64,000 nt of DNA from Octopus sinensis (GCF_006345805.1 NC_043004.1:77376001-77440000); one strand, 5' to 3'. Counted from the first letter of the stretch, positions 23,545-45,300 are shown. Numbers and translations are program-made. Notes: generated by a model from the letters alone, not told the origin.

Positions 23545-23550
23545 TAGATA
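23126..23550. repeat. Compound microsatellite (GATA)n-(GATG/GGTG)n-(GATA)n
   Basis: Directly visible. Confidence 0.95.
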
Positions 23551-23645
23551 TATATATATACAGGCACACACAAATACAAAGATTAATTGATAGATACAAC
23601 TGAGTGGGAAGACAAAAATATGAGACACAGCCTAGTGCTTTTTTA

Positions 23646-24096: not shown

Positions 24097-24677
24097 CTAC
24101 ACATACATGTATACATATACATCTATATCTATAGAAATACATCTATACATACACAGCTATACATATACATGTATACATATACATCTATTTATATATACAT
24201 GTATATATGTATATATATATATATATATACATATAAGCTGAGACGATAAGACGTGTTTTTACTCCTCTCTGCGCCGGTCAGCAGCAAGCTTCACAGCTAC
24301 ATTCGTCGTAATTGACCATCACATATATTCCTGTATATTTGAAACCACGCTTTTTCCCAACTCGTGAGTAGACTTTTCCTTAACCACAAACTATTTTCAT
24401 AATTTTCAAACGACCAAATATTTTCAAACACCTTCTGATAACTAAAGGATCACCCACACATTAAAAATTAGAAAAAGAGGGAAAAATAAAAAGAAAAGAA
24501 AAGAAAGATAAAATAACTACAAGCTCATAATTCAAATACAAACTTCTCAGTATTACAACAAACATTCTGTACAATCAATTCTACATACTTCTCCTTAAAA
24601 AAAAATAATAATAATAATTAAAAGTAATCAACAAAACGAACGAACAAAATAAAATTTAATAAAACATATCAACCAGA

Positions 24678-25808: not shown

Positions 25809-27721
25809 CTATAATGAATCTAGCAAAAGAACTGGAAAAAAATCCGAGCTATCACCCACCGCCATCCACCACTATTACCCCACTACACATGCCATTAAAA
25901 AGCAATCAAATAAACAAATCACCAAAACAATTAAAACCATCCACTCTCGCCTCAACATTTCAGCTTAATGCCCAAGGCATCAGCCCTTCCACCAATACAC
26001 AAAAATGGAAGATAAGATTCCTGGAGGACTGGGTCGAGGCCCATCCAAACCACATCCCTTTCTTCGTCCTCACTGAAACCCATCTTAGTGACCTCCACTT
26101 GGAAGCCGAGGTGAAAGTTAAAAATTTCAAAACCATTCGTGCCGATCGTGCTGGCAGAAGAAAAGGTGGGACTGCCATTTATGTCCATGATTCATTCTCA
26201 ACAGAAGCCATGAACATATTTTCGAATGGATACTGCGAAGCAGTCGCTGTATTCAGTCAAACCAACAACTTAACAGTAGTTGGGCTCTACAGACCACCCC
26301 AAACGCCCCTACCATGCTTCAAGGAATGCCTCAACAGCATAAAGTGTTTCATTCAGCAGTGTCAACCTGACAACATTTTAATGATGGGAGATTTCAACCT
26401 TCCCGGGGTTGACTGGTCTACAAACAGTCTGCCGCCAGGTTCTTCTCTCTCAACCCCTGACAGGGAGGCAGTGGAATCGCTTCTTGACTTCATGGATGAC
26501 TTCTTCTTGTCCCAACTGGTACTCGAACCAACGAGATGTCACAAAAACGTCTTAGACTTAATTTTCAGCAATCACACTGATACTATCCACAATATTGCAG
26601 TGGAGAAAACCCTACTCTCCGACCTTGACATGGTTCTCTGTGATCTGAGATTTCACTGGCCAAAATGCAAAACAAATGTCATCCCTCCTGTTCATCCATT
26701 TGACACTATGGATTTCCACAATGCAAACTGGGAAGCGATCAATAATGATCTTGCACAAGTCGATTGGTCCTTCACGCACACATACACACCCACTAACATC
26801 AAAAAGTCCTGGCAGACACTTGTAGACACCATCACGAACATATGTGCAAGACACACCCCATTAAGATCTGCAAACAAATCTAAGTGTCGAATCCCTAGAA
26901 ATAGAAAATCTCTCATAAGGAAAATTAAAAGAATCAACAAAAAGATCAACATGCTGAAATACTGTCAACAGCAACACACCAACCTGACTGCCATCTCGTC
27001 GCTAGAGATTAAAAAACATAAACTCCAAAACAACATGATGTCTATCATCAATAGTCAGCGAAGAGCTGAAGAGGCCTGGGCCATTGAGAAGATCAAACTC
27101 AATCCCAAAGTGTTCTTTTCATTTGCAAAAAAACACAGAGTCACTGGTTCTACTGTTGGCCCTCTGATTGATGAAAATGGTACTCTTCAAGACAATGCCA
27201 AAACCATGGGAGAAATATTGCAGAAACAATATTGCTCTGTTTTCAGCAATCCTGATATGACTGATCTGGGCTGTATCAGTGATGTTACTCCCCAATACAC
27301 TTTATCGGACATAACATTTGGCGCTCCTGATGTCTTAGCAGCAATAAAGGAAATGAAGCATAATTCAGCAGTAGGTCCCGATAGGTTCCCTGCTTGTGTC
27401 TTGAAGATGTGTCAAAACCAACTTGCACCCCCTCTAGCCAATCTGTGGCGGAACTCATTGGATGCTGGATATATACCAGAAGACCTTCTATCCCAGTCTG
27501 TTGTCCCAGTTTTCAAAAAAGGAAACAAATCGCTTGCCGTGAATTACCGTCCAATCTCACTCACCTCTCATATCATCAAGGTATTTGAGAGGGTGCTGAG
27601 ATCGCGTATGACTCACTTCCTTGAGAGTCATAATATGCTGAACCCCAACCAGCATGGTTTCCGTATTGGGAGAGATTGCCTGACGCAGCTACTGCATCAT
27701 TTTTGCCCGACCCCACCTTGA
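25358..27721 (+). CDS. Stop-free frame encoding two CCCH zinc fingers, APE endonuclease and N-terminal RT (truncated by deletion)
   Basis: Frame is open from after TAA at 25355-25357. Fingers CRYSLRHRLCTDRDCKFTH (25481-25537) and CRYSQRDRLCLHRDCPFTH (25640-25696); APE motifs LTETH, RADR, GGTAIY, MGDFN, LDLIF; RT motifs KKGNK, NYRPISLTS, NQHGFR. Confidence 0.9.
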   Translation, partial: CYLKEFTSYRSQRSPKLQQTIIYTFHSSHTRTYTPTRNPIICRYSLRHRLCTDRDCKFTHLPGTKRSIPTNYNSNHHNTTSPQPPISQTRNPQICRYSQRDRLCLHRDCPFTHLPGTRRTFKDNHSHKNSRGHSHLRFPRQETTSSSSFLAIMNLAKELEKNPSYHPPPSTTITPLHMPLKSNQINKSPKQLKPSTLASTFQLNAQGISPSTNTQKWKIRFLEDWVEAHPNHIPFFVLTETHLSDLHLEAEVKVKNFKTIRADRAGRRKGGTAIYVHDSFSTEAMNIFSNGYCEAVAVFSQTNNLTVVGLYRPPQTPLPCFKECLNSIKCFIQQCQPDNILMMGDFNLPGVDWSTNSLPPGSSLSTPDREAVESLLDFMDDFFLSQLVLEPTRCHKNVLDLIFSNHTDTIHNIAVEKTLLSDLDMVLCDLRFHWPKCKTNVIPPVHPFDTMDFHNANWEAINNDLAQVDWSFTHTYTPTNIKKSWQTLVDTITNICARHTPLRSANKSKCRIPRNRKSLIRKIKRINKKINMLKYCQQQHTNLTAISSLEIKKHKLQNNMMSIINSQRRAEEAWAIEKIKLNPKVFFSFAKKHRVTGSTVGPLIDENGTLQDNAKTMGEILQKQYCSVFSNPDMTDLGCISDVTPQYTLSDITFGAPDVLAAIKEMKHNSAVGPDRFPACVLKMCQNQLAPPLANLWRNSLDAGYIPEDLLSQSVVPVFKKGNKSLAVNYRPISLTSHIIKVFERVLRSRMTHFLESHNMLNPNQHGFRIGRDCLTQLLHHFCPTPP

Positions 27722-28042
27722 ATACTGCTGTCCACTGTGGTCTCCCTACACAAAACAAAATATTATGAGAATTGAAGCTCCCCAAAGGTCAATCACAAAA
27801 AAGATAGATGGCATGTCAGACCTTGAATTTTGTGTGGTCAGTTTCTTTTTTGACGTGTCCTGGTGTAATGTTGAAGAGAGCGGGTCCAATTGAGGTGAAA
27901 TAGTTGTGCCGTATTGTCGTTATGTGATGCGATTTAGATTTTTGTTGTGGACGGATGGCACGTGGTCCAAGCCTTGGATGCATTTTGAAGGTGATGCCAA
28001 CATCATTCGGACAGTGCTGATGGAATATTTTCCACATCATAC

Positions 28043-29308: not shown

Positions 29309-30661
29309 TTAACAAGAATGCTGCAAATTTTCTGATGAAACACTTGCAAAAGGTTCGCGTTTGACTATCAAATCACAATAGTTTCCTGCGTAATAATACA
29401 CATGCATCGTTCGTGACGATCGATTCTGACCTGGTGGATCATAAGCTTTCCAGAAATATTCATCATTCGATACACGAACGAGAGCTTCAACTTTTGTCAT
29501 AAACATCACTGAAAATGCAAGAATTTGTTTATCTTCGCGTGTTGAGTGGCCGAGTAATTTAGATCTACAATTTGGGTCCTTGTCATCACATTTGAAATTG
29601 TAATCTAAACGCATAGAAAAAATATCAATTATCTGTCGTAGTTTATCATGAAAGTTGATATTTCCGAACAGAAAGATGCTGGCACACATGAAGAAGTCGG
29701 TGTTATCGCCACTGTTAAAACCGACATTGATTTCGGCACCTTGTTCCTGGCCTTTTTTCTTTGCAGTTCGAGGTGACGTATTCTCATCGCTATGGACAAA
29801 TGCATCACAATTCATATTTTCCACCCGGTTAACTTCAACAAAGTCAATATTTTGAATGTAATAGCGAAACTTATGGTGAGTTTCTAACCTCATGTTATGT
29901 TTGATCCAGTTTTCCACAGTTAACCTTTTATTTGATCCCAACATATGTCTATTGGAAGTATTTGAAGCATTATTAGCATTTGTTCCATCAGTTTTATCCA
30001 AATTCAGCAAAACATCTTGGCAATTCTTCGTATTTGATATATGAGGTGAATCAATTCCAGAACTAGATTCGTCAGTTCTTCTTTCGTTCTCCGTCTTGTC
30101 ATTTCCCAAACTCCCCTTTACAGGCTTCTCTTTTTCTCTTCCTGAATCGCATTCTAATGTTAAATTTGACATAGAGATGTTACCATTTTCCATGATTTCT
30201 TTTCCCCCCTTTATGCAAATACTTTCTTTTAGCAAAGTATTTTTAGCAGCTTCTTCACTTTCTATAACATTATTGATGCCTAGTTCGTTTTCTTTTTGAT
30301 TTAGATTATCATCCTCTGATGTATCTTTCACAGGAAATACACTTTTCCCTCCTTTTATCTCAACAATTCTTTGCGAATTCGAAGCAAACGGAACGCAACG
30401 ATACTTTCTACTGTCATGCTTAACATTTTCTTTTGGTAAGTTTTCTCTTCTTTTCCCTCCTTCAGTCTGCATTGAGTGACTTCCTGGTCTTTGAGTTCTT
30501 GTGGTTGAATAAAACGTTTCACAACCCACAAGCCATGATTTTCCTTTCCGATATTTTTTAGTAACAATTTCTGTAAAACGCTCCTCCATATACACTGAAG
30601 AACCACCATCGTCAGACCAATAATTTGAATTTTCGTCCATTTTTTCGTTATCATCAGCCAT
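29309..30661 (-). CDS. Single-exon 450-aa protein, low-complexity N-terminal region and C-terminal OTU-like domain lacking catalytic Cys and His
   Basis: Intact ORF, probable start MADDNEK at 30661. GDNTDFFMCASIFLFGNINFHDKLRQ aligns to the OTU motif GDGNCLFRAxSxxLxGxxxxHxxLR (Cys position = Asp); YYYAGNYCDLI aligns to YHxGNHYD (His position = Tyr). Alignment done by eye. Confidence 0.7.
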   Translation of the reverse strand: MADDNEKMDENSNYWSDDGGSSVYMEERFTEIVTKKYRKGKSWLVGCETFYSTTRTQRPGSHSMQTEGGKRRENLPKENVKHDSRKYRCVPFASNSQRIVEIKGGKSVFPVKDTSEDDNLNQKENELGINNVIESEEAAKNTLLKESICIKGGKEIMENGNISMSNLTLECDSGREKEKPVKGSLGNDKTENERRTDESSSGIDSPHISNTKNCQDVLLNLDKTDGTNANNASNTSNRHMLGSNKRLTVENWIKHNMRLETHHKFRYYIQNIDFVEVNRVENMNCDAFVHSDENTSPRTAKKKGQEQGAEINVGFNSGDNTDFFMCASIFLFGNINFHDKLRQIIDIFSMRLDYNFKCDDKDPNCRSKLLGHSTREDKQILAFSVMFMTKVEALVRVSNDEYFWKAYDPPGQNRSSRTMHVYYYAGNYCDLIVKREPFASVSSENLQHSC

Positions 30662-31134
30662 ATTTAAGAAGACTATGTACAAATATACATTTACAGACGA
30701 AAAGCCAACCGAAATGAACGTCTGTTGGAAACGATGGAGTCCTCCCCGTGTGTTGAGAGAGAAGCCCTCACCTGTGTTGGGACAATGATAGTTCAATCCC
30801 AAATGTTTCCCACTAGACACAGCAGACTAGTTTCAAAACGATTCCATAAACAACACAGGTCTTTAAGCAAAACTGAAGCTAAAAGTACTCAGTTAAAGGA
30901 ATTTTCAACGTTAATTTTATCGATTTATTGCAAGAGAATAAAGTCATATGATTAAATACGTTTTCAAAAGTTGTGTTACGTTTTGCGTACGTCATAAATA
31001 AAATGCTTCAAAACATGAGTTTAAAACGTAGTAATAATAATCATAGCTACTATTCAAATTTTTGGAGTGTTTGCTAATTATATCAACTTCAGTACTTGAC
31101 TAGTATTTTATTTTATCGACCCAGAAAGCAATCG

Positions 31135-32330
31135 TTCTTTGTCTACCGTATTTCAGTGAAAGTACTTCGCGATTTCTGCTGAGTCGCGACAGGTCGTCGA
31201 GCTAGGAACTAAAGTCAGCCAACTTTTCCGACCCGTCGCTTTCCCGAATATCTGCTCGGAACCGAGTAGCACGTGCCCATTCCGATCTGTCAAAGACTTC
31301 TTTGTAGCTTTTCGTTGCCACATCATGCCTCCACCGCTCGGACCCATCGGACGGCTTTTATCCTTTCATATTTAAATGTAAATGCCTTAGATCTGACAAC
31401 AGACCCTTCGTGTTCGTGTATGAAAACATGGTCAAGTGTTGCTTCCGCAGCCAGTACATCGGTCGTGATATCTTTACTAGTTGCCTCCTCCAAACGTATT
31501 CCGCTCTATTGAGAGCCCTTTACTAAACGCCATCGATTCTGATAGAATCACTTTCTTTAGGGCGACCCGGTCATTGACGATTGCTCACGTCAACCATCTT
31601 TAAACTAATTCACTAATCTACTCTCTGTAGTCCTTGCATGCCGGTATGGACATGTCCAACTTCCAGACATTAGGTTCCTGTCTATGGTTACTAAGTCGGC
31701 TGAGCAGATCACACATTTGTAATCTGTGTAGCCGACCAGTTGAACTATGGGCATCTTACACTACCCTCTATCCACTGGCCTAAAAAATACTTTATCTAGA
31801 TCCGATCTTGTTGTTCCGCTGTAGTTACTCCATGTCCACACTAGCATATCAGGGAAGTCCAGTCAATACCTGTCAAACACTTGGAAACTTTTGAACAGGT
31901 TCTCTAGGCCTTTGCTTCTCTTTCTCCGTATACGCTAGCTTCATCCAGTCCTTCATTGAGTCTAAAATACAATTCCAATCCCTTACTAAAGGTAGTAATC
32001 TGAACGCCTCAAGAAAAACTTCAAGACGTCTGAAGAAATCATACCATCCTGCCCCCAACAGGGGTCGGACGGTCACAAGTTTTGAGGCACTCGCATTGTT
32101 GCCATTTACATCCATGACCACCAACGTACCAACCGGGTCCAGGAAGATTACCCGTACTTTGATACATGAGGATTTCCAGTATAACACGGCCACCTTGCTG
32201 TCTGATCTGAATAGACCACGAGATGTATGGAGGTGTCCTTAGCGGTTCGGGTGGTAGTTTGCGGGAGTTGTGGAATTGAAAAAGAGTCTACCACTTGATA
32301 GGGGTGCGGGATTTTTTTTTTTACCAAGTA
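31135..32330 (-). pseudogene. Degenerate L1/Tx1-group LINE ORF2 fragment (APE endonuclease region)
   Basis: GTLVVMDV...YDFFRRLEVFL...DWNCILD and downstream LDRV...VGYTDYK...WKLD segments match the L1/Tx1 APE pattern; stops and frameshifts present. Confidence 0.7.
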
Positions 32331-32570
32331 TGTTATGTTGTGTTCATTGTCTCAACTGCTTCAGTGCATATATAAGTAAATCCCTTTTGGGACATAGCGT
32401 GACTGTTAATTAAGACGTGCGGTGAATGAGGTGGAACGTACCTAAGAGTATGATATTAGCTAATGGCGGAGCCCCGGCCAATCAGCTGATTTAAAGAACC
32501 ATTGGGTCCAGGATGAAGAGGCATCATTGTGCATTTGTGGAAGTTTGGTAGCTAGTCGCATAAAGCAATA

Positions 32571-32871
32571 TGTTGTTTGTTCCTTCTCGAGCCAGGTTCA
32601 TAAGGGCCGGTTTCCCGGTTTCCTTGGCGTATAGGTTTCCCACCTGGACGGGACACAGGTCCGTCGCAGGTGAGCTGCTAGATGCAGGAGGAAAGAGTGA
32701 GAGAATGTTGTGGCGAAAGAGTCAGCAGAAGTTCGGTATTATCTTCTGCCGGAGCCGCGTGGAACTTAGGTGTTTTTGCTCATAAACACACACATCGCCC
32801 GGTCTGAGATTCGAACCCGCGATCCCTCGACCGCGAGTCCGTTGCTCTAACCACTAGGCCATGTGCCTCCA
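32571..32871 (-). mobile_element. SINE family D (family C head, V-domain-like body)
   Basis: Head tggaggcacatggcctagtggttagagc with B box gggttcgaatct; cacctgcgacggacctgtgtcccgtccaggtg resembles V-SINE domains (recalled); TSD cataaagcaa at 32559 and 32872. Confidence 0.8.
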
Positions 32872-33345
32872 CATAAAGCAAAGCAATATACGAGTGATCC
32901 GATAGGTACAGAGACAGTGATGATTTCATCGCGGTAAGTTTGAAAGTTAGAAAATGATGGTGTTCAGAGTGTCTGTAATAGTCAAGGATGCGTATAGAAG
33001 AAACTAACTGATGTAAATAATTGAAAGCTGTGAAATATTCGGTTTCTGCATCAGCGGTGTCGGTGAATGCCATGAAAAGATGTTAGCAATGAAGTCATAA
33101 GAAATGATGGCTTCACAAAGAATTATGAAGGTGAATGGAATATGTGAACTTAGTACAGATAATTTGACATTATTTTTGAATTGTGCATGCAAAAACTCAT
33201 GATAGAGGTATTCTTTTTCTTGGGACAAATTGTGGACCAGTGTTATTCTTATCGTAGTTCACAAATCCAAACACGAAAACGGTATTCAACTTTGAAGTTT
33301 TGGAGACAGACGTCCCCTTTTCACACATACACATTCACACATACA

Positions 33346-33394
<49 letters not shown>

Positions 33395-33837
33395 ACACAC
33401 ACACACACACACACACGCTCACACAGGCACACACATACACACACGCACGCACGCACATGCACTTATGTATTAATGATGTAAATAAATATATGACAAGTAT
33501 ACATATTACTGAAATACGCATAAAGTAAACAAATGCAGACAAGTATATTAATATAACAAATTTTTTAAAATAATAAAAACCTACAATCAATGAAGAGACA
33601 AAAGAAACGGTAAGATGATACATGTTGATTTTATTTGGCATTTCTGTTTACTTAGAAACCTACAATGAACAGGTCATTTCACAGACGCTAAACCATAAAT
33701 TTCACAGGGTACAGTCTTAAAGTTGACACCGCTCCGCTAAACGCAGAAAATTTCTGTCTCGCTATTGGCTAAAAATACACAATTTTTTTTTTTTTAAACC
33801 TCTGTAACTTTTTCCTCCAATTTTTTCAAGGATGCAC

Positions 33838-34089
33838 CTTTATCGCTCGGGGTCAAACATGCCGTTTAACTTCCGCAGATCGCAGTTCCTGGTGAGACCA
33901 TGCTTCGCCATGTCCATCAACAAATCCCAAGGCCGAACACTATCAGTGTCGGGCATCCATTTAGTGGAGCCGTGCTTTTCACATGGGCAACTTTATGTGG
34001 CCTGCTCCTGTGTAAGGAGTAAAAACGCTCTTTTTGTGTATGCTCCTCAGGGCAGAACTCGCAATGTTGTCTATAGCGAAGTTTTATAG
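33838..34089 (+). pseudogene. Helitron Pif1-family helicase C-terminal fragment
   Basis: FRRSQFLVRPCFAMSINKSQG...FSHGQLYVACS...NVVYSEVL, the typical Helitron helicase terminus. Confidence 0.85.
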
Positions 34090-34369
34090 ACGTAGAAAGA
34101 AGAACAAGTCATCATTACATCCTATGTAGTTATAAGCAGGTAATCCGGAAGCACTGGCCGGACATATTCTCAAACCATGGCAACATGACTCATGGACTCT
34201 TCCTCTTCTTTATTGGTCAATGCTGACTTCTCCGACAACAATGCTCACTCGGCCGATAGCAGCGCTTGGCCAAGTTGCTCATAGAGTTAGGCTAGAAGGG
34301 CCAGGCCCCTTATTTTTTGGTTAAGGCTGTTGGTAAGTTTTCCTAAGTTACTCCAATCCGGATCCCCAA

Positions 34370-34560
34370 TGCAAACCTTCGAATCAACTTTCTCCAATGC
34401 AGATCTCTAATGCAACTTTATCCAATTTAAATCTTTGAGTCACCCATTTTCACTGCAGATCTCCAGTGCCAACCTTCGATGCAACTTTCTCCAATTCAGA
34501 TCTTTGATGCAGATCTCCGAGACAACCTTCTCCAATGCATATCTTAGATGCAGCCTTGAC
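34370..34560. repeat. Diverged short-unit minisatellite
   Basis: Recurrent caactttctccaatg and cagatct blocks. Confidence 0.6.
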
Positions 34561-35055
34561 CGATAGTACCCCTAGGAGGGATTAGGGCTAGATCGAAATT
34601 AGTCGCTGCCTTTTAGAGGCTCCCGAACCCCCTTTCGCTAGGTTAGCTTAGGCTTAGGTTACGGCTTCGTTGTGATGTGAACATAACTTTTTCTGATACA
34701 GAGGATTGGGAGCCCTTTTGGGCGTTCTATTTTCCTTGCCGGAAGGGCTCCCAACCCGTGGGCCAAGGGTGGTTAGATGATAGGGGGATCGAAAGGGCCA
34801 GCATGTGCTACCTGATCACTTCTGCCGGTCAAACTCCCAACCCACGCATTCCCGTCGTGACACTGATTCTGCAGAACTGGATTGGATGTGAAAACAAACT
34901 TTAAAGTATAAATATAGATTTTTTGAATCAGCAATGTCTGAGTTTCCCAGCAACGGAGTGTTGTTTCATAGGGGTTTTCTTTTTTTGTCTTTTTTTCTTT
35001 TCCAGATTATTTCGCATGCTTTCAACGAATGTGACATCAAAATCACGCGTATTTC

Positions 35056-35666
35056 GGTACTTTTTGGTTATCTTACCCCCCCCCCCCCACCATTGAAAAA
35101 TTGCCATTAAAAACTGAGTTATCTCCCACTAAAAAGTTGAGTTTATGTGGAGCCACATAGAGATTGGATTAAAAAGGTTAGATCCTTTTGATTCAATACT
35201 TCAGCACATTGATTGATTGATTGATTGATTCTAGTTTCAGCTCATGCTGCGTTTGGCCTCCATGGTATGATTTTGTCATAAAAATATTATTAGATTTGTA
35301 GTGGCTTCATGCAGGCATGACGTGGGTTCGATCCTCGATCGCCAAGAAGGCATCTGGTAAATGTAACTACTGTTATTCACAGAAAATCCGTGAGAGAAGT
35401 GTTGTTGAACTGTTAAGTGAAATTTGGCGATCGAGGATCGAATCCACGCCATGTCTGCAATGAAGCCACTACGGATTCAATAAGATGTTTAATCTTTTCA
35501 GTTTTTCTTATTTTTTACGTTTTCGTGTTTATTAATTTTTTTCATTTTTTTTTCTTTGTTTTATTGAGGGTTAAACAATTTCTTTAATTGGGGGATATAT
35601 TTTTCATAAAACGGGGTATATTTTTCATAAAATGTTTTAATGGGGGTGAGATAACCAAAAAGTACC
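35056..35666. mobile_element. MITE with GGTAC-starting TIRs, inserted in the repeat shared with 5394-5655
   Basis: TIRs ggtactttttggttatct(t/c)acccc; internal inverted pair at about 35318-35365 and 35423-35471; the empty site is visible near 5465-5480. Confidence 0.8.
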
Positions 35667-36883
35667 AATAGCTCCTTTCCCCAGAAAAGGAAAGATTTGG
35701 CTGCTATTTCTTGCACACCCTGCTACCACGTAATAGATATTTCGGGTCCTTTATCGCAAATAGCTGCTACGTGGTAGCAGGGCGTGCTAGAAATAGCAGC
35801 CAAATCTTTCGAGCTGAGATACGTTGAATGCACTCGAAAAACGTTTTGTAACGGTATTCCCTTGGGGCGATCATTCATTCACTTAATCATTTAGTTTCGT
35901 TTTAACGTGAAAGAGAGGAGAAAATGAAAGATGTATGAACATGTATATGAAATGGACGTGTGTGTATGAGAGAGAGGAGGGAGAGAGAGTGCCACTTACA
36001 CATACATGAGAACACACACACGTTCATTCACTTACTCTTTCTCTCTCTCTCTCACACACGTACACACACACATATGCACACGTACATACATTGATGTATG
36101 TACGTATACATGACAACACACCCCTTCACCCACTCTTTCTATCTCTTTCTTTTTATCTTTCTCTCTCTTTCTTCCTCTCTCTCTTTCGCTCTCTCTCTCT
36201 CTCTCTCTCTATTTCTCTCTCTCTTTTACACACACACGTCTATTTCATATACACGCACATACATCTTTCACTTTCTCCTCTCTTTCACTTTAAAACAAAA
36301 GTAAATAAATAGAAATTTTTTACGGAAATTAACGAATTTCGGATGACAGTTCTGAAAGTCAAAACGAAAGATCGCCATTCATTTGAAAATAATTTTTAAA
36401 AAACAATTAAAATATTGTCTGTTTAAAGAAAGCTAAAATATAAATACTTACTGTACAAACAACTTAAATTTTTGAAATCACATTCAGTTAAAAAATATTT
36501 CTAAATGCTTGAAATATTGTGTACGTCAAAATGTCGACGTTTTTTTTTCTTAAAGATGCAAAGACTATGTGTGTGTATATGTCACAGATAGAGGACGTGT
36601 GCTTGTGTTGATTGACACTCCATGGCAATCATTATGTGTGTGTGTATTCTGTATGTGTGTTGACGTCACGGAAGCCATGTCTTTTTTTCGTCAAGAAATA
36701 ACAAAGAAAAATTGCGTTTAATCGTTTTCATTAATAAATAGACGTCCAAATATCACAAAAATTTGTATTGCACTGCCGAAGGTAAGTATGAAGATAAATA
36801 TGCAAAAAAAAATTAAGATAAAATATTATTTCTGAGATATTTCGGGTACACACACAAACATCTCTAGAGTTCTAGTATTATCA

Positions 36884-36954
<71 letters not shown>

Positions 36955-37985
36955 GTATGTATTACGTATGTATGTATGTATGTATGTATGTATGTATATA
37001 CTCAAGCGCGCCCACATACGGACACAACACACGCACACTATATTTTATATAACGACGCTCATATAACTGCTTTTAAATGATGCAATGCTTTTGTTTTTGA
37101 ATGAGTAATTTGATAAACACTTTCATACACATGATTTGGAGAGTGAGAGAAAAAAAACAGTGCAAACAAAAGGGAATAGAAAGGAAAATAGACAGAAAGA
37201 TAAGTGCCTTCAACAGTATTTTAAGCTTGTCCTCTATTTTCTGCATATTACTCGATGCAGCCAGCTTACATACGACAGGCTGGTTTCGTCGAAAGCTTTA
37301 ATATTAGCGCTAGGATGAAAAAATATCGAATAGATTATATCAAACCGTCATTTTTCAGGCATTTTCCGACTTAATTGCAAAACAATTTCTGGTAGACATT
37401 AGTTTTTGTGGCTTATCAAAAGTTTGTGGGAAACATTTTAAGCCAGAGGAATTAAGTGATAGCCACAAACGTATTCTGTGCAACAGTAATCAATGAGTAA
37501 TTCCTTGTTCTCTTCAGCATTTATTTTAACATCTAGCACAACACTGTAGCAAGATTGAAAGCAACGATTAAATTACTTATGTCTCCGAAGACTACTTTTT
37601 CTGGCAAAACTGCGATCAGCTATCGGTTAATCATAAATTAGTTTACCAGGCAGGAATCATATCTAGATGTTTGCTACAACATTCTGTCGGCAATAATTTT
37701 ACGTTCATAAAGAATGTTTGCACAGGTAAGATTAAATATGTTTTATTAGGAAATGATGTTTAATAAAAAGAATTTCGGCTTGTTTGTTGCGTTGTTGTTG
37801 TTGTTATGTTGTTATTATTGTTGTTATTATTGTTGTTGTTGCTGCTGCTGCTGCTGCTGCTGTTGTTTTGCTTTTTTTTTTTTTTTCATTTACTTTAGTT
37901 CGATGGTTTTCAACATATGAAACTACACGTAACCTGTTAAATTTCAGAGTAATAACTTCAGAATACAAACAGATGACTCTCTCTC

Positions 37986-38037
<52 letters not shown>

Positions 38038-38405
38038 TCCCACCCTCTCTCTCTCAAACTTTAAACCTATTTAATGGATCTCAATATTCCTCTGAAAATT
38101 CTTGATCGTTTCATACAATTTCCCCTTAGCAAAGATTACTTTAATAATCATTAATTTGAAATTGAATTAATAATGGACTCTTAAGAAAAAAATTGAATGC
38201 TTTCTCATTTGCTGGTAAACATGTAATTGTCTGAAACACGAGCTAAATTTTGTTTCTGAAATTAGGCACAAATATTTCTCTTCTACCCGTGTTCATTTAC
38301 TTGTCACCTCTTTTGAATTAACTCATATCGTTTCAGTAACTTAAAAGACAGAGATTAGCTATTATTTCATCTAATATCTAAATTCATTTAATATAAAAAA
38401 TTTGT

Positions 38406-38524
38406 GGCACTACTTAAATACAGAGGTCCCGTGAGGTTGGGGTTAGTTTTTAGGGTTAGTTAGGATTAGGGTTAGGGTTAGTTTTAGGGTTTGTTTTTAG
38501 GGACCTCTGTATTTAGGTAGTACC
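38406..38524. mobile_element. 119-bp MITE enclosing degenerate (TTAGGG)n
   Basis: 25-bp TIRs gg(c/t)actac(t/c)taaatacagaggtccc; interior gggttagggttag-like repeats; flanks aaatttgt and cattttgt match 6 of 8. Confidence 0.8.
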
Positions 38525-38949
38525 CATTTTGTTAGCAGTTAATTCTAGTCTATTCATTGAATCAAGATATCTTGTTAAATTCAACATTAATAAAAAAAAA
38601 ATTGCTATTTCTACGTTTCAATGGCGTTCGGCTGAACTGTAACTGTCGATGTTTTAGAGCAACACTCGCCTAACGATATATTCAACACTTCCGCGTCAAG
38701 CAAATAATTTACAGTCATGTATGCTACCTAAGCGGTGAGCGGCCAAATTATGCCTTCCTTCGAATAGTATTCCTCAAATTCAAATATTTTGAATTCTCCA
38801 ATAGAAAAGAAAGTACCTAAGAGAGAATTATAATTCTTAATTCCAGGGGTTATTTTAATTTTTTTCTATCTAGTTTCAGTCCAAGGATTGTGGCCATGCT
38901 GGGGCACCGCCAACTGGTGTTGCTACACTTTCATTAATCCTCCTTTAAT

Positions 38950-39445
38950 AGTTGGCATTTGGTGAGTGAGTGAATTTGACGCTGCTGCGTTCACTCCTGC
39001 TTCCTGCTGTGACTCTTGACAATAAGAGATCCACTTTCGCTTTGAAGACATCTACATCCGCCCCATGTAGATCTTTTAGTTTCTTCGGAAGGATATTGAA
39101 GAGCTGTGGACCCTTAAATCCCAAGGTATTGCAGTATCTGGTCCCGTATTTTGACATCGAGACAGTGGAGGGGGGGGCACTATGTAATGGCGCCCTGTTC
39201 TGGCGTTTGTATAACTTTCAACGCCAAAGTTTGGGACAAGTTCTTCCCGGAACTTCCAAATGTATATTACAGCAAATCTTTCCTGCCTTCGTTCTAGGGA
39301 GTAAAGTCTTAACCTCTTGAGTCTTTCACAGAAACTAATTTGTTTCTATGAGGCTCTTCCTCGTACAGCTTCGCTGAACCGCTTCGAGTTCTGCTATTAA
39401 TTTCATGCTATGCAGTGGCCACAGTTGGGAGCAATGGTTAAGACG
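38950..39445 (-). pseudogene. CR1-group LINE 3' fragment
   Basis: LNHCSQLWPLHS...ELEAVQRSCTRK and GPQLFNILPKKLKDL...VFKAKVDLLL, typical CR1 C-terminal motifs. Confidence 0.8.
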
Positions 39446-39760
39446 ATATACAAACAGTTTTTTCAAACAGATGAGCAATAAATGTATTTTACGATATGTT
39501 TGCAACAAACCATTTAAGTCTATAAAACTTTTAAAACCGAATATATCTTTGCCTGACTTTTTATTCCACAGAAAAATTCTTTCAGAAATTATAACAAACG
39601 GTGACAGGTGCATAGAAATTGCATGTAGAATAAAATTACAATGTTTAATATTACAGCGATAAAAAATATTTTACAAATTTTCTCACGTTTTTAATTAAAT
39701 ATGGGAATATATGTTCTCAAACACAGCTTGTTAGATCTTCTGGAGCATTAGATAATTTGT

Positions 39761-40435
39761 TCAATTTTTCAAAATTAAGTCGAAATGATGTCTAGCTTCA
39801 TTAAAAAGCTGTATAGAACAAATGGACACGTTGGGCGCGATACCATGCGGTGTAGTAGAGGACCAGAAATACGGAGCTTCCTTTCCTCCCGTCAGAATAT
39901 CTATTCTTCGGTGAAACAAATGTGCAGCAGCATATATTTCACACTCAGTAGCGCAAGTGTTAGTTTCTAACATTGATTTGATGTGTTCCAGTACAGAAAC
40001 TTTCGGTTGTGGCGCCGGATGTTCATCGATATACAAACAGTACAAGTAATTCGCTACCAACACTCTGAATTGTCTGTGATATTTCGAACTACCAGTAAAA
40101 TACTGAGACAAACATCGAAAGAAGGAGTTTCCGTCCTTAATTTGAAGAAGAATTTTCCATTGAGGGTTTTTGGTTTCTGGAGCCACTTGCTGTTCCGGAC
40201 CATGTGGCATAAAATAAAACACTGGTTGGTTAAGCGAATCATTAGATTCTATTTCCCACAAACTGGCCGTCTGAGTTGTTAATTCTTGCGATTCATCATC
40301 TTTCTTTTGTAAGACTTTTTGCTTTTGATACTCTTCATACACTGGGTGTTTTTCTGAACCACCGAGACATTCTTCTATTTGTTGTTGACAAAGGGGTTTA
40401 GAACTATCATTTATCTGGCTAGAATCTCCCTCCAT
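39761..40435 (-). CDS. Single-exon 224-aa protein with C-terminal OTU domain, catalytic Cys replaced by Ser
   Basis: Intact ORF; KDGNSFFRCLSQYFTGSSKYHRQFR, ATECEIYAAAHLF and HHFDLI match OTU motifs, with His and Asp retained. Confidence 0.8.
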   Translation of the reverse strand: MEGDSSQINDSSKPLCQQQIEECLGGSEKHPVYEEYQKQKVLQKKDDESQELTTQTASLWEIESNDSLNQPVFYFMPHGPEQQVAPETKNPQWKILLQIKDGNSFFRCLSQYFTGSSKYHRQFRVLVANYLYCLYIDEHPAPQPKVSVLEHIKSMLETNTCATECEIYAAAHLFHRRIDILTGGKEAPYFWSSTTPHGIAPNVSICSIQLFNEARHHFDLILKN

Positions 40436-41219
40436 TTGCTGATTCCAAAGATAGAACAGGGTAAAAAGAGTGTAATTTTCCTTACTTTTATGAAACTGAA
40501 ATTTTCACATTATTTACTTATAACCAATAACTGTACACATATGAGTAACTTATGACGTTGTTCTGTTGTTAGCAACAGTTTTCATGTAAACAGATTTTGT
40601 TGGAAATTTCAAACTTTGCTATCCTTACAAGTAAGAATGCGTAATATTTCCTACTCGTAACAACACACGATAATCTTCGTTTCAGCTCAATACAATTTTA
40701 GAATATTATCTAATAGAGATATATTGGTGAACAGGTACACAGATTGATAGACAGACTATATACATGCAAACATGCACAAATATGTGTGTCAATATCAGCC
40801 AGTCTGTCTGTTTGTCTGAGCATTTGCTTGTGTGTCTGCTTAAATGCATGTATCTAGTTAAGTCAATCGGGAGAGCGAAGAGCGAACTCTACCTACAGCT
40901 TTTTTCCTACTCATGAGATAGAAAATTGGAATAATCTCTCTCTCAGGGCTTGCAAACGATTCAAATAAAACACATAAAGCTATCATTGGTAAGTCGAGTG
41001 CTAAACAGTATTGATTTTGGGGTGAAAGCTATTTCCTTCGGACGCTGGCACAGATTACTTTACAAAAGGCATGAATAGCACAACACCTTATTTTCATTCC
41101 ATGTCACTAAAAGATAGTGTGTGTGTGTGCGCACGCGTGTATGTCTGTTTGTTATGAATTATAATATCCTATCATTAATTCCTTTCTACAAGAGTAAATA
41201 ATAGATAAAAATATAGATA

Positions 41220-41422: not shown

Positions 41423-41640
41423 ATGGATGCCAAAGTCTTCGAGAGAAGCCTACCAGACGACCCAACTGAGGAAGGTTATATTTACTGGAAACGGAAGCTA
41501 CATATCTACACAGCAAAAGCAAAGGTTCCAGATGAATCTAAACTGGAGGTACTCTTAGTCCTCTGCAGAGCAAGGACCTACCCCATCGTCGAAGAATCCG
41601 AAACCTTCGAGGCAGCAATAGAACGCCTGGACTCAAAATT
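41423..41640 (+). pseudogene. Ty3/Gypsy gag N-terminal fragment
   Basis: YWKRKLHIY...KLEVLLVLC...FEAAIERLDSKF resembles Gypsy gag N-termini; follows the LTR candidate. Confidence 0.6.
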
Positions 41641-42198
41641 CAGGTAGAATGGTTCCCACTGTCGATGATCTTGAAAATTTAAGCATTCTCTCATGAGAGG
41701 TTGTGTTGGTAGCTGTACCAGGGAATCCTCTTGTGGTTGATAATGCCACGGGTAGAACTGTTAACCATTGTCTTTTATCTAGTTGTAGTGAACTAAGTGC
41801 TAGATTTATGGTCTTCATGAGGGTACCGTTGGTCCTTTCACATTGGCAATTGCCTTGAGGTCGATAGGGAGATGTTCTAGTTGTTATTGTCCCGTTAGCG
41901 TGAAGGAAGCCCTGGAGCTTCTTATTATCAAATTGGGTTCCTCTGAGAGAGTGGATACAACTTGGTGATCCAAACAATGAAAAGAGGTTGAGCAGGTCGG
42001 AAGTTACTGTTTTGGTACTCAAGTCTTTGCATGGGTATGCGAATGGGTACCTTGAGTACTCATCGACTATTACCAATAAATAGCAGTATTATGTGGTTGA
42101 TGGCAGGGGACCAACAAAGTCAATGGAGAGGCGCTCCCAAGGTCTCGATGCCTGTATTAATTGACCCTTAAGTGGTTTGTGGAAGCGGGATTTGAGTT
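41633..42198 (-). pseudogene. Ty3/Gypsy integrase core fragment, inverted relative to gag
   Basis: PWERLSIDFVGPLP, LVIVDEYSRYPFA, FGSPSCIHSLRGTQF, YRPQGNCQCERTN; one stop at about 42090. Confidence 0.9.
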
Positions 42199-42323
42199 GT
42201 ATGTATGTAATTATTCAGTTTATTTCAAGATTTCTTGCCAATAGAGAAAGACCCAGTTTCTAACCTAGATCCAAGACTCCTTCATTGGAATTTCAACATC
42301 AACGACTGGGTATTTTTGTGTGC

Positions 42324-42356
<33 letters not shown>

Positions 42357-45300
42357 TGTATGTATGCATGTATGTATGTATGTATGTATGTATGTATGCA
42401 TGTATGTATGTATGCATGTATGTATGTATGTATGTGTGTGTATGTATGTATGTATGTATGTATGTATGTATGTATGTATGTATGTATGTATGCATGTATG
42501 TATGTATGTATGTATGTATGTATGCATGTATGTATGTATGTATGTATGTATGTATGCATGCATGTATGTATGTATGTATGTATGTATGTATGTATGTATG
42601 CATGTATGTATGTATGTATGTGTGTGTATGTATGTATGTATGTATGTATGTATGTGCAGATTTGTATGTATGTGTGTATGTATTCTCACGAATATAGTTG
42701 CATATCTAGACATGCTCATATATATTTAAATGATAAACTTCTGGAAAGGTTTACAGATTTTTACAGTTCCAATGATGGATTGGATCTCTAGTCTCCAAAT
42801 TAGCTTTCTCCTTTCTGGGTTTGAGAAGCCTAATTTCTCAAGATTGGTATTTAGGCAGCGTGTTACATATACCAGGGCCCCAATAATTACAGGTATAAAT
42901 CTGAACTTGTAATCTGGATAGAGTAAACTGCAGATTTCTCAATAGTTCAGCAAAGGTGTTCTCTTTTTCACTGATCTTCTGGTTTATATTAACATCCGCT
43001 GGGCAGCTGATTTCCACAACCATGCACAGTTTCTCTTCTCTATCCCAAATCATTATATCAGGTCTGTTGTGCTTACATTTTATTGAGGTCTTCACTGGGA
43101 CATTCCACCAGTACTCCTTTTTATTATGAGTGGTTATGGCTTCTACCATATTGTGGGTTCTCATTTCTTTTATCCTCGGGATTATCCTTCCAACAGATTC
43201 CATTATAGAATGTCCTAGCTACAGCGTCATGTCTCATCGGTAGATAATACCGTGGTGACATTTTCGAAAACTTGCTTATGATGTGGGTGATATCTTCAGT
43301 GTGAACTCCACAAAGTCAGCATCGGTTGTTATATCTTACAGCTTTTCGTGCATCTCTATCCCTTTTGTGCATCGGGTATTTGGTTGATATTTCCTGTTCC
43401 TGAATTATAAACGTATTGCCTTCAAAGTGGGAGGGAGTAATCCGGCTACTTGTCCATGATAAACTACTTTGATGATCGATGTTACTATCATCACGCAGCT
43501 TTCTACTAACATATCCATGCATAGTCTTTTGCTCATATAGACTCATCCTTTCATCTGATGATACGTTGCGGAAGAGTCGTACGACTTCTTTGGACATGTA
43601 TTCCAGGTTATGAGACAAAGCATGTTGCTCAAGGAACTGCCTTCCAAGTCTTATAATGTTATCAGCTTCATGTATGCAAACTTGGTGGTTAGAAGATGTT
43701 GCCGAAGGGATATGATGCGACATTCAAAGGTATTTTGGATCGATGTTAGGCCTCTGCCACCTTGTTTTCGTTTTAGGTGGTGGTGGTGGTGGACTACGTC
43801 ACTGTTTGTGTGGAAATTATGTGTGCTTGTTAGTATTTTGGGGGTTTTCACATCAATGGCTCGAATCTCATCAAGTGTCTAATCAAGCAGCCCAAATGTT
43901 GGTATGAGTATTGGCACTGCAAACACATTGTAGGCCACTGTTTTATTGGATGCAGGTCCAAATTTTCTTTATTTTTGAGGTCCAAATTTTCTTTATTTTT
44001 GAGGTCCAAATTTTCTTTATTCGGCTGTAATATTCTTTAGGACACGTGTTTTGTTACACGTGCCAGTGTAAGCTATATTTCATTCACCCGTAGATACCTC
44101 AGACATTCCCCGTCAGATACTGGGGAAACAGTCAAATCATTGATGGAGATGTTACTAGTCTGGTTTATAGCTTTTCCCCTTTTAACAACCATATAACAGC
44201 ATTTATGCTGACCAAACTCCAACCCTACATCCTTTGAGGATGTTGTAACTAGGTCAAGGCTCTTTTTCATCTCATGCATATTCTTTGCATAAAGTTTTAA
44301 ATCATCCACAAAGAAACAGTGTGTAATTTTGGTGTTTCTGTTCCCTTGTGAACCAGTGAGATATCCTTCAGACTTCCTTAACATGAATGACAAGGGGTTT
44401 ACAGAAAGTATAAACAACATCACAGAGAGGCTGTCTCCTTGGAATATGCCTCTGCGATGCTGTATTCCATCTGTGATAATACAGCCATTCTTTGTGCTTA
44501 ATTTCAAGATGGTGGCCTATGAGGAAGTCAGGTCAGCTATGGCTTTGACTATTCTCACTGGAACTTTAGTAAGTTGTAGGGCTTCTAGCATCCATGAGTG
44601 GGGAACAGAGTCAAAGGCTTTCTTGTAATCTATCCACATTGAAACTAGGTTTTTCCTATGCTCTCACACCTCTGACATCACAGTTTTGTTGATTAACAAT
44701 TGCTCGGCACATCCCCAGATTCCTCTCTTCCCAGCTGCTTGTTCTTCTGTGATAATGGTCCTAGAGCAAGAGGTTTAAACATCTTGTACATTCATTTCTG
44801 ACATACAATTGACCGGTAGTTTTTTGCCATGTGGGTGGTTCTGCATTTGGGGATCAATTTTGTCTCTGCCAGAGCTAACCAGTGTGATATACTACTGTTC
44901 CCAATGAAAGCTTTCTGGTACAGAATGATAAGATATGGTCGGTAGAATGCAGGAGCAGTAACTTTTTCGGATTTCAGCCACAGAGAATCTTGATTAAATT
45001 CCTTCTCTTCACTCCAAATTTTCCTCCAGAAGGAGTCTATGTCTTCTCGATAAGGAACTTCCGTGATGTTTCTGCTCCTCCTCTCATATCTCTGTATACT
45101 GCTGCCTGGTTGCGGTTAAATTTTTTTATTTATTGTTCTTCTCTCGGTTATTCTCTTCTGATGTCGGAGTTTTCCTCTGACAGCTTTTAACTCCTGATTG
45201 AGGGTTATCAGTTTGCAAGCGATGAGTGCCCTCTTTTTGCTGTCACCAAACATCATTTCTAACTTCTTTACTTTCTGTTGGTGGAACGTTTAGTGATTTG

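What the first reader, a model, noticed from the sequence alone, without database searches (positions are those of the whole stretch)
29309..40435. Pair of single-exon, same-strand OTU-like genes, both with the catalytic cysteine replaced
Seen: the only two long non-TE-like ORFs are intact amid decayed repeats, lie about 9 kb apart on the minus strand, and each ends in an OTU-like domain after an unrelated N-terminal region. They share a YFW motif (DEYFWKAYDP, APYFWSSTTP) and end the domain in DLI. Established: OTU deubiquitinases need a Cys-His pair, Cys-less OTUs such as FAM105A/OTULINL exist, and some Helitron/Helentron-type transposons carry OTU domains. Inference: this could be a small lineage-specific cluster of pseudo-deubiquitinases, possibly TE-derived, that bind rather than cleave ubiquitin. 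The two different replacements (Cys to Ser, Cys to Asp) would imply separate losses or continued divergence.
Basis: partly seen in the sequence, partly recalled or inferred. Interest (0 to 1): 0.8.

Follow-up and report, generated by a model that had tools for sequence, protein, structure and literature searches.

The report
Conserved cephalopod OTU and pseudo-OTU gene pair
Two neighbouring intron-less octopus genes encode ubiquitin-protease-like (OTU) domains that have lost the catalytic cysteine; they are an old, single-copy, selectively maintained cephalopod gene pair rather than transposon debris, and probably act without cleaving ubiquitin.

Summary
The window is the Octopus vulgaris locus OX597821.1, about 115.78 Mb. 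Two intact minus-strand ORFs lie 9 kb apart. ORF2 (39761-40435, 224 aa) is a clear OTU domain with Ser104 at the nucleophile position; the His and the DGN Asp are kept. The C-terminal domain of ORF1 (29309-30661, 450 aa from the first ATG, not 503) is a very degenerate OTU, detectable only by profile methods. It has Asp322 at the Cys position and Tyr428 at the His position.

Neither gene is a transposon copy or a pseudogene. Each is single-copy. The same pair, in the same order and on the same strand 7.5 kb apart, occurs in a very distant genome, probably a decapodiform cephalopod. dN/dS of the domains is 0.06-0.12.

The two losses are separate. ORF1 lacks Cys and His in all lineages. The distant orthologue of ORF2 still has DGNC...H, so Cys->Ser is octopus-specific; it is shared by three octopus taxa.

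The nearest relatives outside cephalopods include Helitron-encoded OTUs, so a transposon origin is plausible but not shown. Ubiquitin binding, expression and fold remain untested or inconclusive. Verdict: a new member of a known kind (OTU pseudo-deubiquitinases), of moderate interest.

The parts
39761..40435 (-). ORF2: intron-less 224-aa gene with a variable N-terminal region and a C-terminal OTU domain; not annotated in the reference O. vulgaris assembly
   Evidence: ORF. 87-88% identical orthologues in other octopuses. 53%-identical orthologue P0006 in a distant genome. Absent from the annotation. Whole-gene dN/dS 0.20.
39764..40159 (-). OTU domain of ORF2 (residues 93-224)
   Evidence: Pfam OTU positions 3-128 of 128, E=3.4e-4. 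OTUD1 structure 4bop, E=2.6e-4. Keeps 19 of 21 positions conserved in 68 other OTUs. dN/dS 0.105, Fisher p=3e-8.
40124..40126 (-). Ser104 codon (TCC) at the catalytic-Cys position of ORF2 (DGN-S-FFR)
   Evidence: Aligned to the Cys of OTUD1 'dgnClyr'. TCC in two octopuses, TGT (Cys) in the distant orthologue. A third octopus protein, P0071, also has DGNS.
39953..39955 (-). Cys161 codon (TGC) replacing the conserved Trp of the 'tWAT' motif in ORF2
   Evidence: Trp in 85% of 68 OTUs and in the distant orthologue; Cys in all three octopus sequences. Sequence read.
39785..39787 (-). His217 codon (CAT): retained catalytic His of ORF2 (H-H-FDLI)
   Evidence: Aligned to the His of OTUD1 'gHYDav'. Codon.
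29309..30661 (-). ORF1: intron-less 450-aa gene (CAI9727381.1-like) with three conserved blocks separated by fast-evolving linkers
   Evidence: Identical but for one residue to the annotated O. vulgaris protein. Whole-gene dN/dS 0.26.
29354..29734 (-). Degenerate OTU-like (pseudo-OTU) C-terminal domain of ORF1 (residues ~310-436)
   Evidence: hhalign 92.8%, E=4e-7. Independent OTU HMM 16.7 and 15.9 bits against a decoy maximum of 8.4. tblastn hit by the Cys-bearing OTU P0025, E=6e-5. dN/dS 0.116 and 0.063. AlphaFold pLDDT 63 with beta-alpha4-beta3 order. Foldseek not significant.
29696..29698 (-). Asp322 codon (GAC) at the catalytic-Cys position of ORF1 (D-N-T-D-FF)
   Evidence: Alignment register. 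Asp in all four ORF1-family lineages.
29378..29380 (-). Tyr428 codon (TAT) at the catalytic-His position of ORF1 (N-Y-CDLI)
   Evidence: hhalign and MAFFT register NYCD against NHYD/HHFD. Invariant in all lineages.
30491..30604 (-). N-terminal block of ORF1 (SSVYMEERFTEIVTKKYRKGKSWLVGCETFYSTTRT); the most conserved part of the protein, function unknown
   Evidence: Nearly invariant across lineages. dN/dS 0.03. No Pfam match, and no match in any OTU relative.
29822..29929 (-). Middle conserved block of ORF1 (RLTVENWIKHNMRLETHHKFRYYIQNIDFVEVNR), function unknown
   Evidence: dN/dS 0.20. Predicted helical, at low confidence.

Best explanation
These are two separate host genes forming an old tandem pair that is specific to cephalopods, as far as public data show.

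The upstream gene (ORF2) is a small OTU-family protein. It still looks catalytically competent in a distant lineage (DGNC...H). In octopuses its nucleophile Cys has become Ser and a conserved active-site-proximal Trp has become Cys, while almost every other conserved OTU position is kept.

The downstream gene (ORF1) joins two unique conserved N-terminal modules to an OTU domain that lost both Cys (to Asp) and His (to Tyr) before the lineages split.

Shown: homology, substitutions, single-copy status, conserved order and strand, purifying selection.

Inferred:
- ORF1 is a non-catalytic scaffold or regulator (a pseudo-deubiquitinase).
- The pair arose by tandem duplication of an OTU gene of the kind carried by Helitron transposons.
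- In octopuses ORF2 now also works without hydrolysis, for example by binding ubiquitin, a ubiquitin-like protein or a partner.

By analogy with other pseudo-deubiquitinases, the pseudo-OTU may regulate or partner its neighbour.
For: Locus identity: O. vulgaris.

ORF2 is an OTU.

ORF1 C-terminal domain is OTU-like.

Catalytic positions.

Synteny: in locus L001 an OTU gene (1885-2541 +, Pfam OTU 41.4 bits) lies 7.5 kb upstream of the ORF1 orthologue (10001-11554 +).

Single copy: two domains per locus and only a handful of homologues in 5.8 billion and 1.84 billion proteins.

Purifying selection:
- ORF2 OTU domain: omega 0.105, p=3e-8.
- ORF1 C-terminal domain: omega 0.116 (p=7e-8) and 0.063 (p=4e-26).
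- ORF1 N-terminal block: omega 0.03.

Ser is shared by three octopus taxa.

Transposon kinship: P0008 (OTU + Helitron_like_N + PIF1) and P0020 (PIF1 + OTU) are among the top hits.

Precedents: Helitron-related inactive deubiquitinase domains in insect host genes (PMC9741609); pseudo-DUBs as scaffolds or allosteric activators (PMC10919355); OTULINL with Asp at the Cys position (PMC7862380).
Against: No expression data. ORF2 is unannotated in the reference genome, and neither exact protein is on record in other assemblies.

The fold of ORF1's domain is not confirmed. The full-length AlphaFold model failed (pLDDT 30). The domain model is mediocre (pLDDT 63), and Foldseek found nothing significant, although OTUD3 and OTUD1 gave the only full-length alignments.

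The ORF1-OTU link would not be significant at database scale: ORF1 relatives are absent from the 66 hits.

The taxon of the distant genome (ENA ERZ21867824) could not be verified. Decapodiform is inferred only from divergence (saturated dS, dN about 0.6).

Tandem duplication is inferred from adjacency and the shared 'DLI' ending, not from a tree.

Nothing shows ubiquitin binding, and OTULINL reportedly does not bind ubiquitin.
Confidence: 0.7

Rival explanations
1. Octopus ORF2 is still an enzyme. Ser104 with His217 and the DGN Asp forms a serine-type triad, or the new Cys161 near the active site takes over as nucleophile. The Cys->Ser change would then retune rather than abolish hydrolysis, for example towards ester-linked ubiquitin or a different substrate.
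For: The His, the Asp and 19 of 21 conserved OTU positions are retained. There is strong purifying selection after the change (omega 0.105). Ser is the replacement in 5 of 7 Cys-less relatives, four of them with the His kept. Proteins annotated as pseudo-DUBs have turned out to be active before (USP53/54, PMC12037411).
Against: From general knowledge, Cys-to-Ser mutants of OTU and other papain-fold deubiquitinases are routinely used as inactive or trapping mutants. The second octopus-specific change removes a Trp conserved in 85% of OTUs, which looks like relaxation of the catalytic site. Some of the Ser-bearing relatives may be decaying transposon copies.
Confidence: 0.12
2. The two ORFs are remnants of a mobile element: a Helitron/Helentron, or a Ginger1 element (integrase plus OTU). 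They would have no host function.
For: Helitron OTUs are among the nearest relatives. Ginger1 transposases carry a C-terminal OTU, including in the mollusc Aplysia (PMC2836005). An integrase fragment lies 1.2 kb upstream of ORF2 (41633-42076). The region is rich in retroelements.
Against: The pair is single-copy. It is syntenic in a genome so distant that synonymous sites are saturated. dN/dS is 0.06-0.12. No Rep/helicase remnant is present in the window or in L001. The integrase fragment is decayed, out of frame, separated from ORF2 by many stop codons and absent from L001. None of the 64 relatives carries an integrase domain.
Confidence: 0.04
3. ORF1's C-terminal domain is not an OTU at all. 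The resemblance to ORF2 is a chance or compositional similarity, and ORF1 is an unrelated orphan gene that happens to sit next to an OTU gene.
For: No Pfam or PDB sequence hit. ORF1 relatives are not found in the exhaustive ORF2 search. Foldseek is not significant. The two distant ORF1 proteins score only 9-12 bits against the OTU HMM.
Against: Four independent comparisons give the same end-to-end register, with the D-x-x-[C]-FF-x-C/A-x-S, 'EI..A', 'W..P' and 'DLI' landmarks aligned. The octopus scores are twice the best of 4,002 decoys. The predicted secondary-structure order fits an OTU, with the Cys-position residue at the N-terminus of the first helix. The gene is adjacent to a bona fide OTU in two lineages.
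Confidence: 0.1

Closest known systems
OTULINL / FAM105A (vertebrate OTU-class pseudo-deubiquitinase) alongside its active paralogue OTULIN
   Same: An OTU domain with a disrupted triad in which the nucleophile Cys is replaced by Asp (Asp139; PMC7862380), as in ORF1 (Asp322). It is a paralogue of an active OTU, and its function is not enzymatic. From memory and not checked here, OTULIN and OTULINL are also neighbouring genes.
   Different: There is no specific sequence relationship. The ORF2-type profile hits OTUD3, OTUD1 and OTUD5 best, and OTULIN is not among 45 PDB hits. OTULINL keeps a His, whereas ORF1 has Tyr. ORF1 has unique N-terminal modules and is restricted to cephalopods.
OTU domains of Helitron/Helentron transposon proteins (and of Ginger1 transposases)
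   Same: They are the nearest identifiable relatives of ORF2 outside cephalopods: P0008 and P0020 carry Helitron_like_N and/or PIF1, and P0011 carries OTU with Herpes_teg_N. They share the DGNCFFR...WAT.EI.AA...W..P...NHYD motif set.
   Different: The octopus genes have no linked Rep/helicase or integrase, are single-copy, are syntenic across deep divergence and are under purifying selection. They also lack the nucleophile Cys.
Inactive VTD (iVTD) domains of insect host genes, related to Helitron-encoded VTD deubiquitinases (PMC9741609)
   Same: The same evolutionary pattern: a deubiquitinase domain of the kind carried by Helitrons, found in host genes outside any transposon context, with active-site residues lost.
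   Different: A different protease family (VTD, not OTU) and a different phylum. The insect genes often carry multiple domain copies and are known to be testis-expressed. Expression of the octopus genes is unknown.
Human OTUD1 / OTUD3 / OTUD5 (active OTU deubiquitinases with solved structures)
   Same: The best structural-database matches: ORF2 against OTUD1 at E=2.6e-4, and the family profile at E of about 1e-16. The DGN-x and H-Y/F-D motifs are in the same positions.
   Different: They are active Cys enzymes. Identity is only about 25-30%. They are not orthologues, since the cephalopod pair has no detectable counterpart outside cephalopods.

Membership tests
OTU superfamily (Pfam PF02338) - ORF2 | Significant full-length match to the OTU profile | tested here: met
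   ORF2 itself scores 21.6 bits (E=3.4e-4), just below the 23.3-bit cut-off, over profile positions 3-128. Its orthologue P0006 scores 41.4 bits. 61 of 64 distant hits are Pfam OTU. OTUD1 structure match at E=2.6e-4.
OTU superfamily - ORF2 | Nucleophile Cys in the D-G-N-C motif | tested here: not met
   Ser104 (TCC) in three octopus taxa; Cys in the distant orthologue.
OTU superfamily - ORF2 | Catalytic His in the C-terminal strand (N-H-Y/F-D) | tested here: met
   His217 aligned to the His of OTUD1. The column is His in 90% of relatives.
OTU superfamily - ORF1 C-terminal domain | Significant match to an OTU profile | tested here: inconclusive
   No Pfam or PDB hit. However, hhalign gives 92.8%, E=4e-7, and a custom HMM of 68 OTUs gives 16.7 and 15.9 bits against a decoy maximum of 8.4. 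It would not be significant at whole-database scale.
OTU superfamily - ORF1 C-terminal domain | Catalytic Cys and His | tested here: not met
   Asp322 and Tyr428 at the aligned positions, invariant in four lineages.
OTU superfamily - ORF1 C-terminal domain | OTU (papain-like alpha+beta) fold | tested here: inconclusive
   AlphaFold domain model has pLDDT 63 and pTM 0.52 with a compatible beta-alpha4-beta3 order. The best Foldseek E-value is 0.5. OTUD3 and OTUD1 give the only full-length alignments but with TM of about 0.3.
OTU deubiquitinase (enzyme) | Hydrolysis of ubiquitin or ubiquitin-like conjugates | not testable with these tools
   Needs recombinant protein with activity probes and di-ubiquitin panels.
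Pseudo-deubiquitinase (general class) | DUB fold retained, catalytic residues missing, gene maintained by selection | tested here: met
   Catalytic residues are missing. dN/dS is 0.06-0.12 in the domains. Orthologues are conserved. The fold is supported by sequence for ORF2 and only weakly for ORF1.
OTULIN/OTULINL subfamily | Specific sequence relationship to OTULIN-type OTU domains | tested here: not met
   The profile of the ORF2 group hits OTUD3/1/5, viral OTUs, otubains and A20, but no OTULIN chain among 45 PDB matches.
Helitron/Helentron element | Rep (HUH) and PIF1-type helicase in the same ORF or element; multiple copies | tested here: not met
   tblastn with P0008, P0020 and P0011 hits only the OTU part in the window and in L001. 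The pair is single-copy in the protein collections.
Ginger1 DNA transposon | Gypsy-like integrase fused to a C-terminal OTU, bounded by terminal inverted repeats | tested here: not met
   The integrase fragment 41633-42076 is decayed, 1.2 kb away, not in frame and absent from L001. No inverted repeats bracket ORF2.

The most novel reading that the evidence does not exclude
The pair is a functional two-gene module that arose in the cephalopod ancestor from a transposon-type OTU: a catalytic OTU and a dedicated pseudo-OTU partner that regulates it. In octopuses the catalytic subunit underwent a natural nucleophile change (Cys104->Ser, with a new Cys161 beside the active site) and remains an enzyme with altered chemistry or substrate. 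It would be a naturally occurring serine-type, or nucleophile-relocated, OTU hydrolase.
Probability: 0.08. Interest if true: 0.75.

Novelty: new member of a known kind. Interest (0 to 1): 0.42.

Why it matters
If the reading is right, cephalopods carry a lineage-specific, selectively maintained pair of OTU-derived genes that no domain database recognises in full. ORF1 has no Pfam hit, and ORF2 is not annotated in the reference genome.

The pair gives a natural time series of enzyme-to-pseudoenzyme transition within one locus. One member lost its catalytic residues long ago. The other is still intact in one lineage and changed to Ser in another, yet both remain under constraint.

This is useful material for three questions:
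- What pseudo-deubiquitinases do.
- Whether Cys->Ser OTUs retain any chemistry.
- How deubiquitinase domains carried by transposons are recruited by host genomes.

It is not a new principle. Pseudo-DUBs, OTULINL (Cys->Asp) and Helitron-related inactive deubiquitinase domains in insects are known precedents.

Tried and rejected
- Full-length AlphaFold model of ORF1 with a 4-sequence alignment: failed (pLDDT 30.5). Nothing was read from it except tentative secondary structure.
- Domain-only model with a 6-sequence alignment: pLDDT 63. Foldseek against the PDB gave no significant match, so the structure test is inconclusive. Relatives from the exhaustive search were not handed to the structure tool, because it accepts only window sequences and homologous-protein hits.
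- A profile of the ORF1 family found no further relatives in 5.8 billion proteins, none in PDB sequences and none in Pfam.
- Ginger1 idea (integrase next to ORF2): rejected.
- Helitron remnant idea: rejected.
- The short public contigs carrying the orthologues (L002-L007) were tested as possible transcripts. L002 and L007 are colinear with the genome and end in microsatellites. L003-L006 have no poly(A). They therefore say nothing about expression or splicing.
- Run and assembly accessions were searched in the literature to name the other species: no hits.
- Exact-protein look-ups of the two window proteins in other assemblies: none on record.
- dN/dS between octopus and the distant genome is not computable because synonymous sites are saturated.
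- The Rfam and tRNA scans found nothing related to the pair.

Full report
**What is there**

The window is the Octopus vulgaris locus on chromosome OX597821.1 (GCA_951406725.2), at about 115.78 Mb. ORF1 is identical but for one residue to the annotated 'Hypothetical predicted protein' CAI9727381.1. The window aligns to that chromosome at 96-98% nucleotide identity.

- ORF2 is 39761-40435 (224 aa).
- ORF1 as listed (29309-30820, 503 aa) begins at a bacterial-code GTG. The first ATG is at 30661 (450 aa) and coincides with the start of the sister-species protein.

The other ORFs of 140 aa or more in the window are microsatellite read-throughs, a LINE, an integrase fragment and reverse-transcriptase fragments.

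**Is ORF2 an OTU?**

Yes.
- It matches Pfam OTU across the whole model at 21.6 bits (E=3.4e-4), just below the 23.3-bit cut-off.
- It matches the human OTUD1 structure at E=2.6e-4.
- In an exhaustive HMMER scan of 1.84 billion representatives it has 66 hits at E<=1e-3. Of the 64 that are not its orthologues, 61 carry Pfam OTU.
- A profile of ORF2 and 11 relatives hits OTUD3, OTUD1 and OTUD5 at about 1e-16.

The OTUD1 alignment puts Ser104 (codon TCC, 40124-40126) exactly on the nucleophile Cys ('ikdgnSffr' against 'ipdgnClyr') and His217 on the catalytic His.

Of the 21 positions that are at least 75% conserved in 68 non-cephalopod relatives, octopus ORF2 keeps 19. The two exceptions are the Cys (to Ser) and the Trp of the 'tWAT' motif (to Cys161, 39953-39955).

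**Is ORF1's C-terminal domain an OTU?**

Probably, but it is very degenerate. Pfam, PDB sequences and a family profile give nothing. Several independent comparisons nevertheless give the same end-to-end register:
- blastp against ORF2: 22% identity over 128 aa, pairwise E=2e-7.
- hhalign of the ORF1-family domain against an OTU alignment: 92.8% probability, E=4e-7, 118 columns.
- tblastn with an unrelated Cys-bearing OTU (P0025): hits the ORF1 domain at E=6e-5.
- An HMM built only from 68 non-cephalopod OTUs: the octopus proteins score 16.7 and 15.9 bits and the distant orthologues 11.8 and 9.0 bits, against a maximum of 8.4 bits among 4,002 shuffled decoys.

In that register the Cys position is Asp322 (29696-29698) and the His position is Tyr428 (29378-29380).

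Structure prediction did not settle the matter. The full-length model failed (pLDDT 30.5). The domain model reached pLDDT 63 and pTM 0.52, with a beta-alpha4-beta3 order and the Asp at the N-terminus of the first helix, as expected for an OTU. Foldseek found no significant PDB match. OTUD3 and OTUD1 were ranks 2 and 3 and gave the only full-length alignments, at TM of about 0.3.

**Are they genes, pseudogenes or transposon copies?**

They are genes.

Homologues are extremely few. ORF1 has four clusters, and ORF2 has one close and one distant orthologue cluster, among 5.8 billion and 1.84 billion proteins. Each locus holds exactly two domains.

The decisive result is synteny. On a 218-kb contig of a very distant genome (ENA ERZ21867824, locus L001), an OTU gene (1885-2541, Pfam OTU 41.4 bits) lies 7.5 kb upstream of, and on the same strand as, the ORF1 orthologue (10001-11554). 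This is the arrangement seen in the window, where the gap is 9.1 kb. Between the two genomes synonymous sites are saturated and dN is about 0.6. Only the ORF1 domain is still alignable at the DNA level.

| Region | Comparison | dN/dS | Fisher p |
|---|---|---|---|
| ORF2 OTU domain | two Ser-bearing octopuses (dS about 0.25) | 0.105 | 3e-8 |
| ORF1 C-terminal domain | same octopus pair | 0.116 | 7e-8 |
| ORF1 N-terminal block | same octopus pair | 0.03 | 4e-5 |
| ORF1 linkers | same octopus pair | 0.36-0.6 | not computed |
| ORF1 C-terminal domain | the two distant lineages (P0004 vs P0005) | 0.063 | 4e-26 |

No Rep/helicase remnant is present near the pair in either genome. The integrase fragment 1.2 kb upstream of ORF2 is a decayed, out-of-frame retroelement piece that is absent from L001.

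**Timing of the losses**

All four ORF1-family lineages have Asp and Tyr at the catalytic positions. That loss therefore predates their divergence.

The distant ORF2 orthologue keeps 'ERDGNCFFRCLS ... VHFDLI' and 20 of the 21 conserved positions. Three octopus sequences (the window, P0001 and the UniParc entry P0071) share Ser104 and Cys161. The ancestral state was an active-looking OTU next to a pseudo-OTU, and only octopuses have two Cys-less genes.

Its conclusion, a recent disabling mutation, does not follow, because the Ser is fixed in several taxa and the domain has stayed under strong constraint since.

**Origin**

The nearest relatives of ORF2 outside cephalopods include:
- P0008 (2,849 aa): two OTUs, Herpes_teg_N, DUF6570, Helitron_like_N and PIF1.
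- P0020: PIF1 and a C-terminal OTU.
- P0011: Herpes_teg_N and two OTUs.

These are Helitron/Helentron architectures, as described in PMC9741609. None of the 64 relatives has an integrase, so a Ginger1 origin (PMC2836005) has no support. Most relatives are OTU-only proteins of unknown context. A transposon origin is therefore plausible, not demonstrated.

Among these relatives 7 of 68 domains lack the Cys. Five of those 7 have Ser, four of them with the His retained. Cys->Ser is thus a recurrent state in this clade.

**How it most likely works**

Shown: both domains are maintained by selection without the nucleophile Cys.

Inferred: ORF1 is a pseudo-deubiquitinase whose conserved N-terminal and middle blocks provide interactions. 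These blocks have no match anywhere. Pseudo-DUBs typically act as scaffolds or allosteric partners of active paralogues (PMC10919355), and the conserved adjacency to an OTU gene makes that gene the obvious candidate partner.

Octopus ORF2 most likely no longer hydrolyses ubiquitin, since both the nucleophile and a conserved active-site-proximal Trp have changed. It retains its binding surfaces.

The main rival is that Ser104-His217-Asp101, or the new Cys161, still supports catalysis. I give it about 12%. The precedent that 'inactive' USP53/54 proved active (PMC12037411) argues for caution.

Ubiquitin binding itself is untested. OTULINL, the closest analogue of ORF1 (also Cys->Asp), reportedly does not bind ubiquitin (PMC7862380).

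**Limits**

- There is no expression evidence. ORF2 is not annotated in the reference, and the short public contigs are uninformative on transcription.
- The taxa of the other genomes could not be named. 'Sister octopus' and 'decapodiform-like' are inferred from divergence only.
- 'Single-exon' means that each coding region is one uninterrupted ORF in every lineage. UTR introns are not excluded, and a polypyrimidine-CAG sits just upstream of the ORF2 ATG.

**Verdict**

This is a new, unannotated member of a known kind (OTU-class pseudo-deubiquitinases, probably of transposon-type ancestry). Interest is moderate.

Noticed in passing
window 24240-28040 (ORFs 24678-25808 + and 25664-27721 +): A LINE-type element is absent from the reference O. 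vulgaris chromosome. It has a 376-aa first ORF with a weak Myb/SANT-like hit and a 685-aa endonuclease/reverse-transcriptase ORF. In the reference the two flanks meet inside a (TA)n microsatellite. It is a presence/absence polymorphism and probably a young insertion.
   Followed up: partly
window 39953-39955 (-), ORF2 residue 161: Besides Cys->Ser, octopus ORF2 has replaced the Trp of the conserved 'tWAT' motif (Trp in 85% of relatives and in the Cys-bearing orthologue) with Cys. These are the only two changes among 21 conserved OTU positions.
   Followed up: partly
proteins P0007, P0011, P0013, P0060, P0068 (relatives): Cys->Ser at the nucleophile position, with the His kept in four of the five (P0060 has Gly there), recurs in related OTU domains, often in the second domain of tandem-OTU proteins. 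Ser accounts for 5 of the 7 Cys-less cases.
   Followed up: partly
window 39761-40435 (-); L008 (reference chromosome): ORF2 is not annotated in the reference O. vulgaris assembly. Its exact protein is not on record in any public assembly searched, although an orthologue has a UniParc entry (UPI0006953121).
   Followed up: yes
window 41633-42076 (-): A decayed retroelement integrase-core fragment (Pfam rve, E=2e-9) lies 1.2 kb upstream of ORF2. It is unrelated to ORF2: out of frame, separated by many stop codons, and absent from the distant locus.
   Followed up: yes
window 35690-35810 and 35884-35976 / 36219-36311: In the intergenic region between the two genes there is a 53-nt near-perfect hairpin (91% complementary, 15-nt loop) and a 93-nt inverted repeat (86%, 242 nt apart). 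They may be MITE-like elements.
   Followed up: no
window 56606-56677 (+): A tRNA-like sequence, Ser (anticodon cga), scoring 36.3 bits in Rfam. It could be a tRNA gene or a tRNA-derived SINE head.
   Followed up: no
window 40439-40470 (-): A polypyrimidine tract followed by CAG lies immediately upstream of the ORF2 start codon. It could be the 3' splice site of a 5'-UTR intron.
   Followed up: no
window 1527-2422, 23066-23628, 42235-42791, 48659-49433, 54852-56050: Long (TATG/CATA)n-type and related microsatellite arrays produce most of the long spurious ORFs (the 'YIHTYIHT' and 'CMYVCMYV' translations).
   Followed up: no
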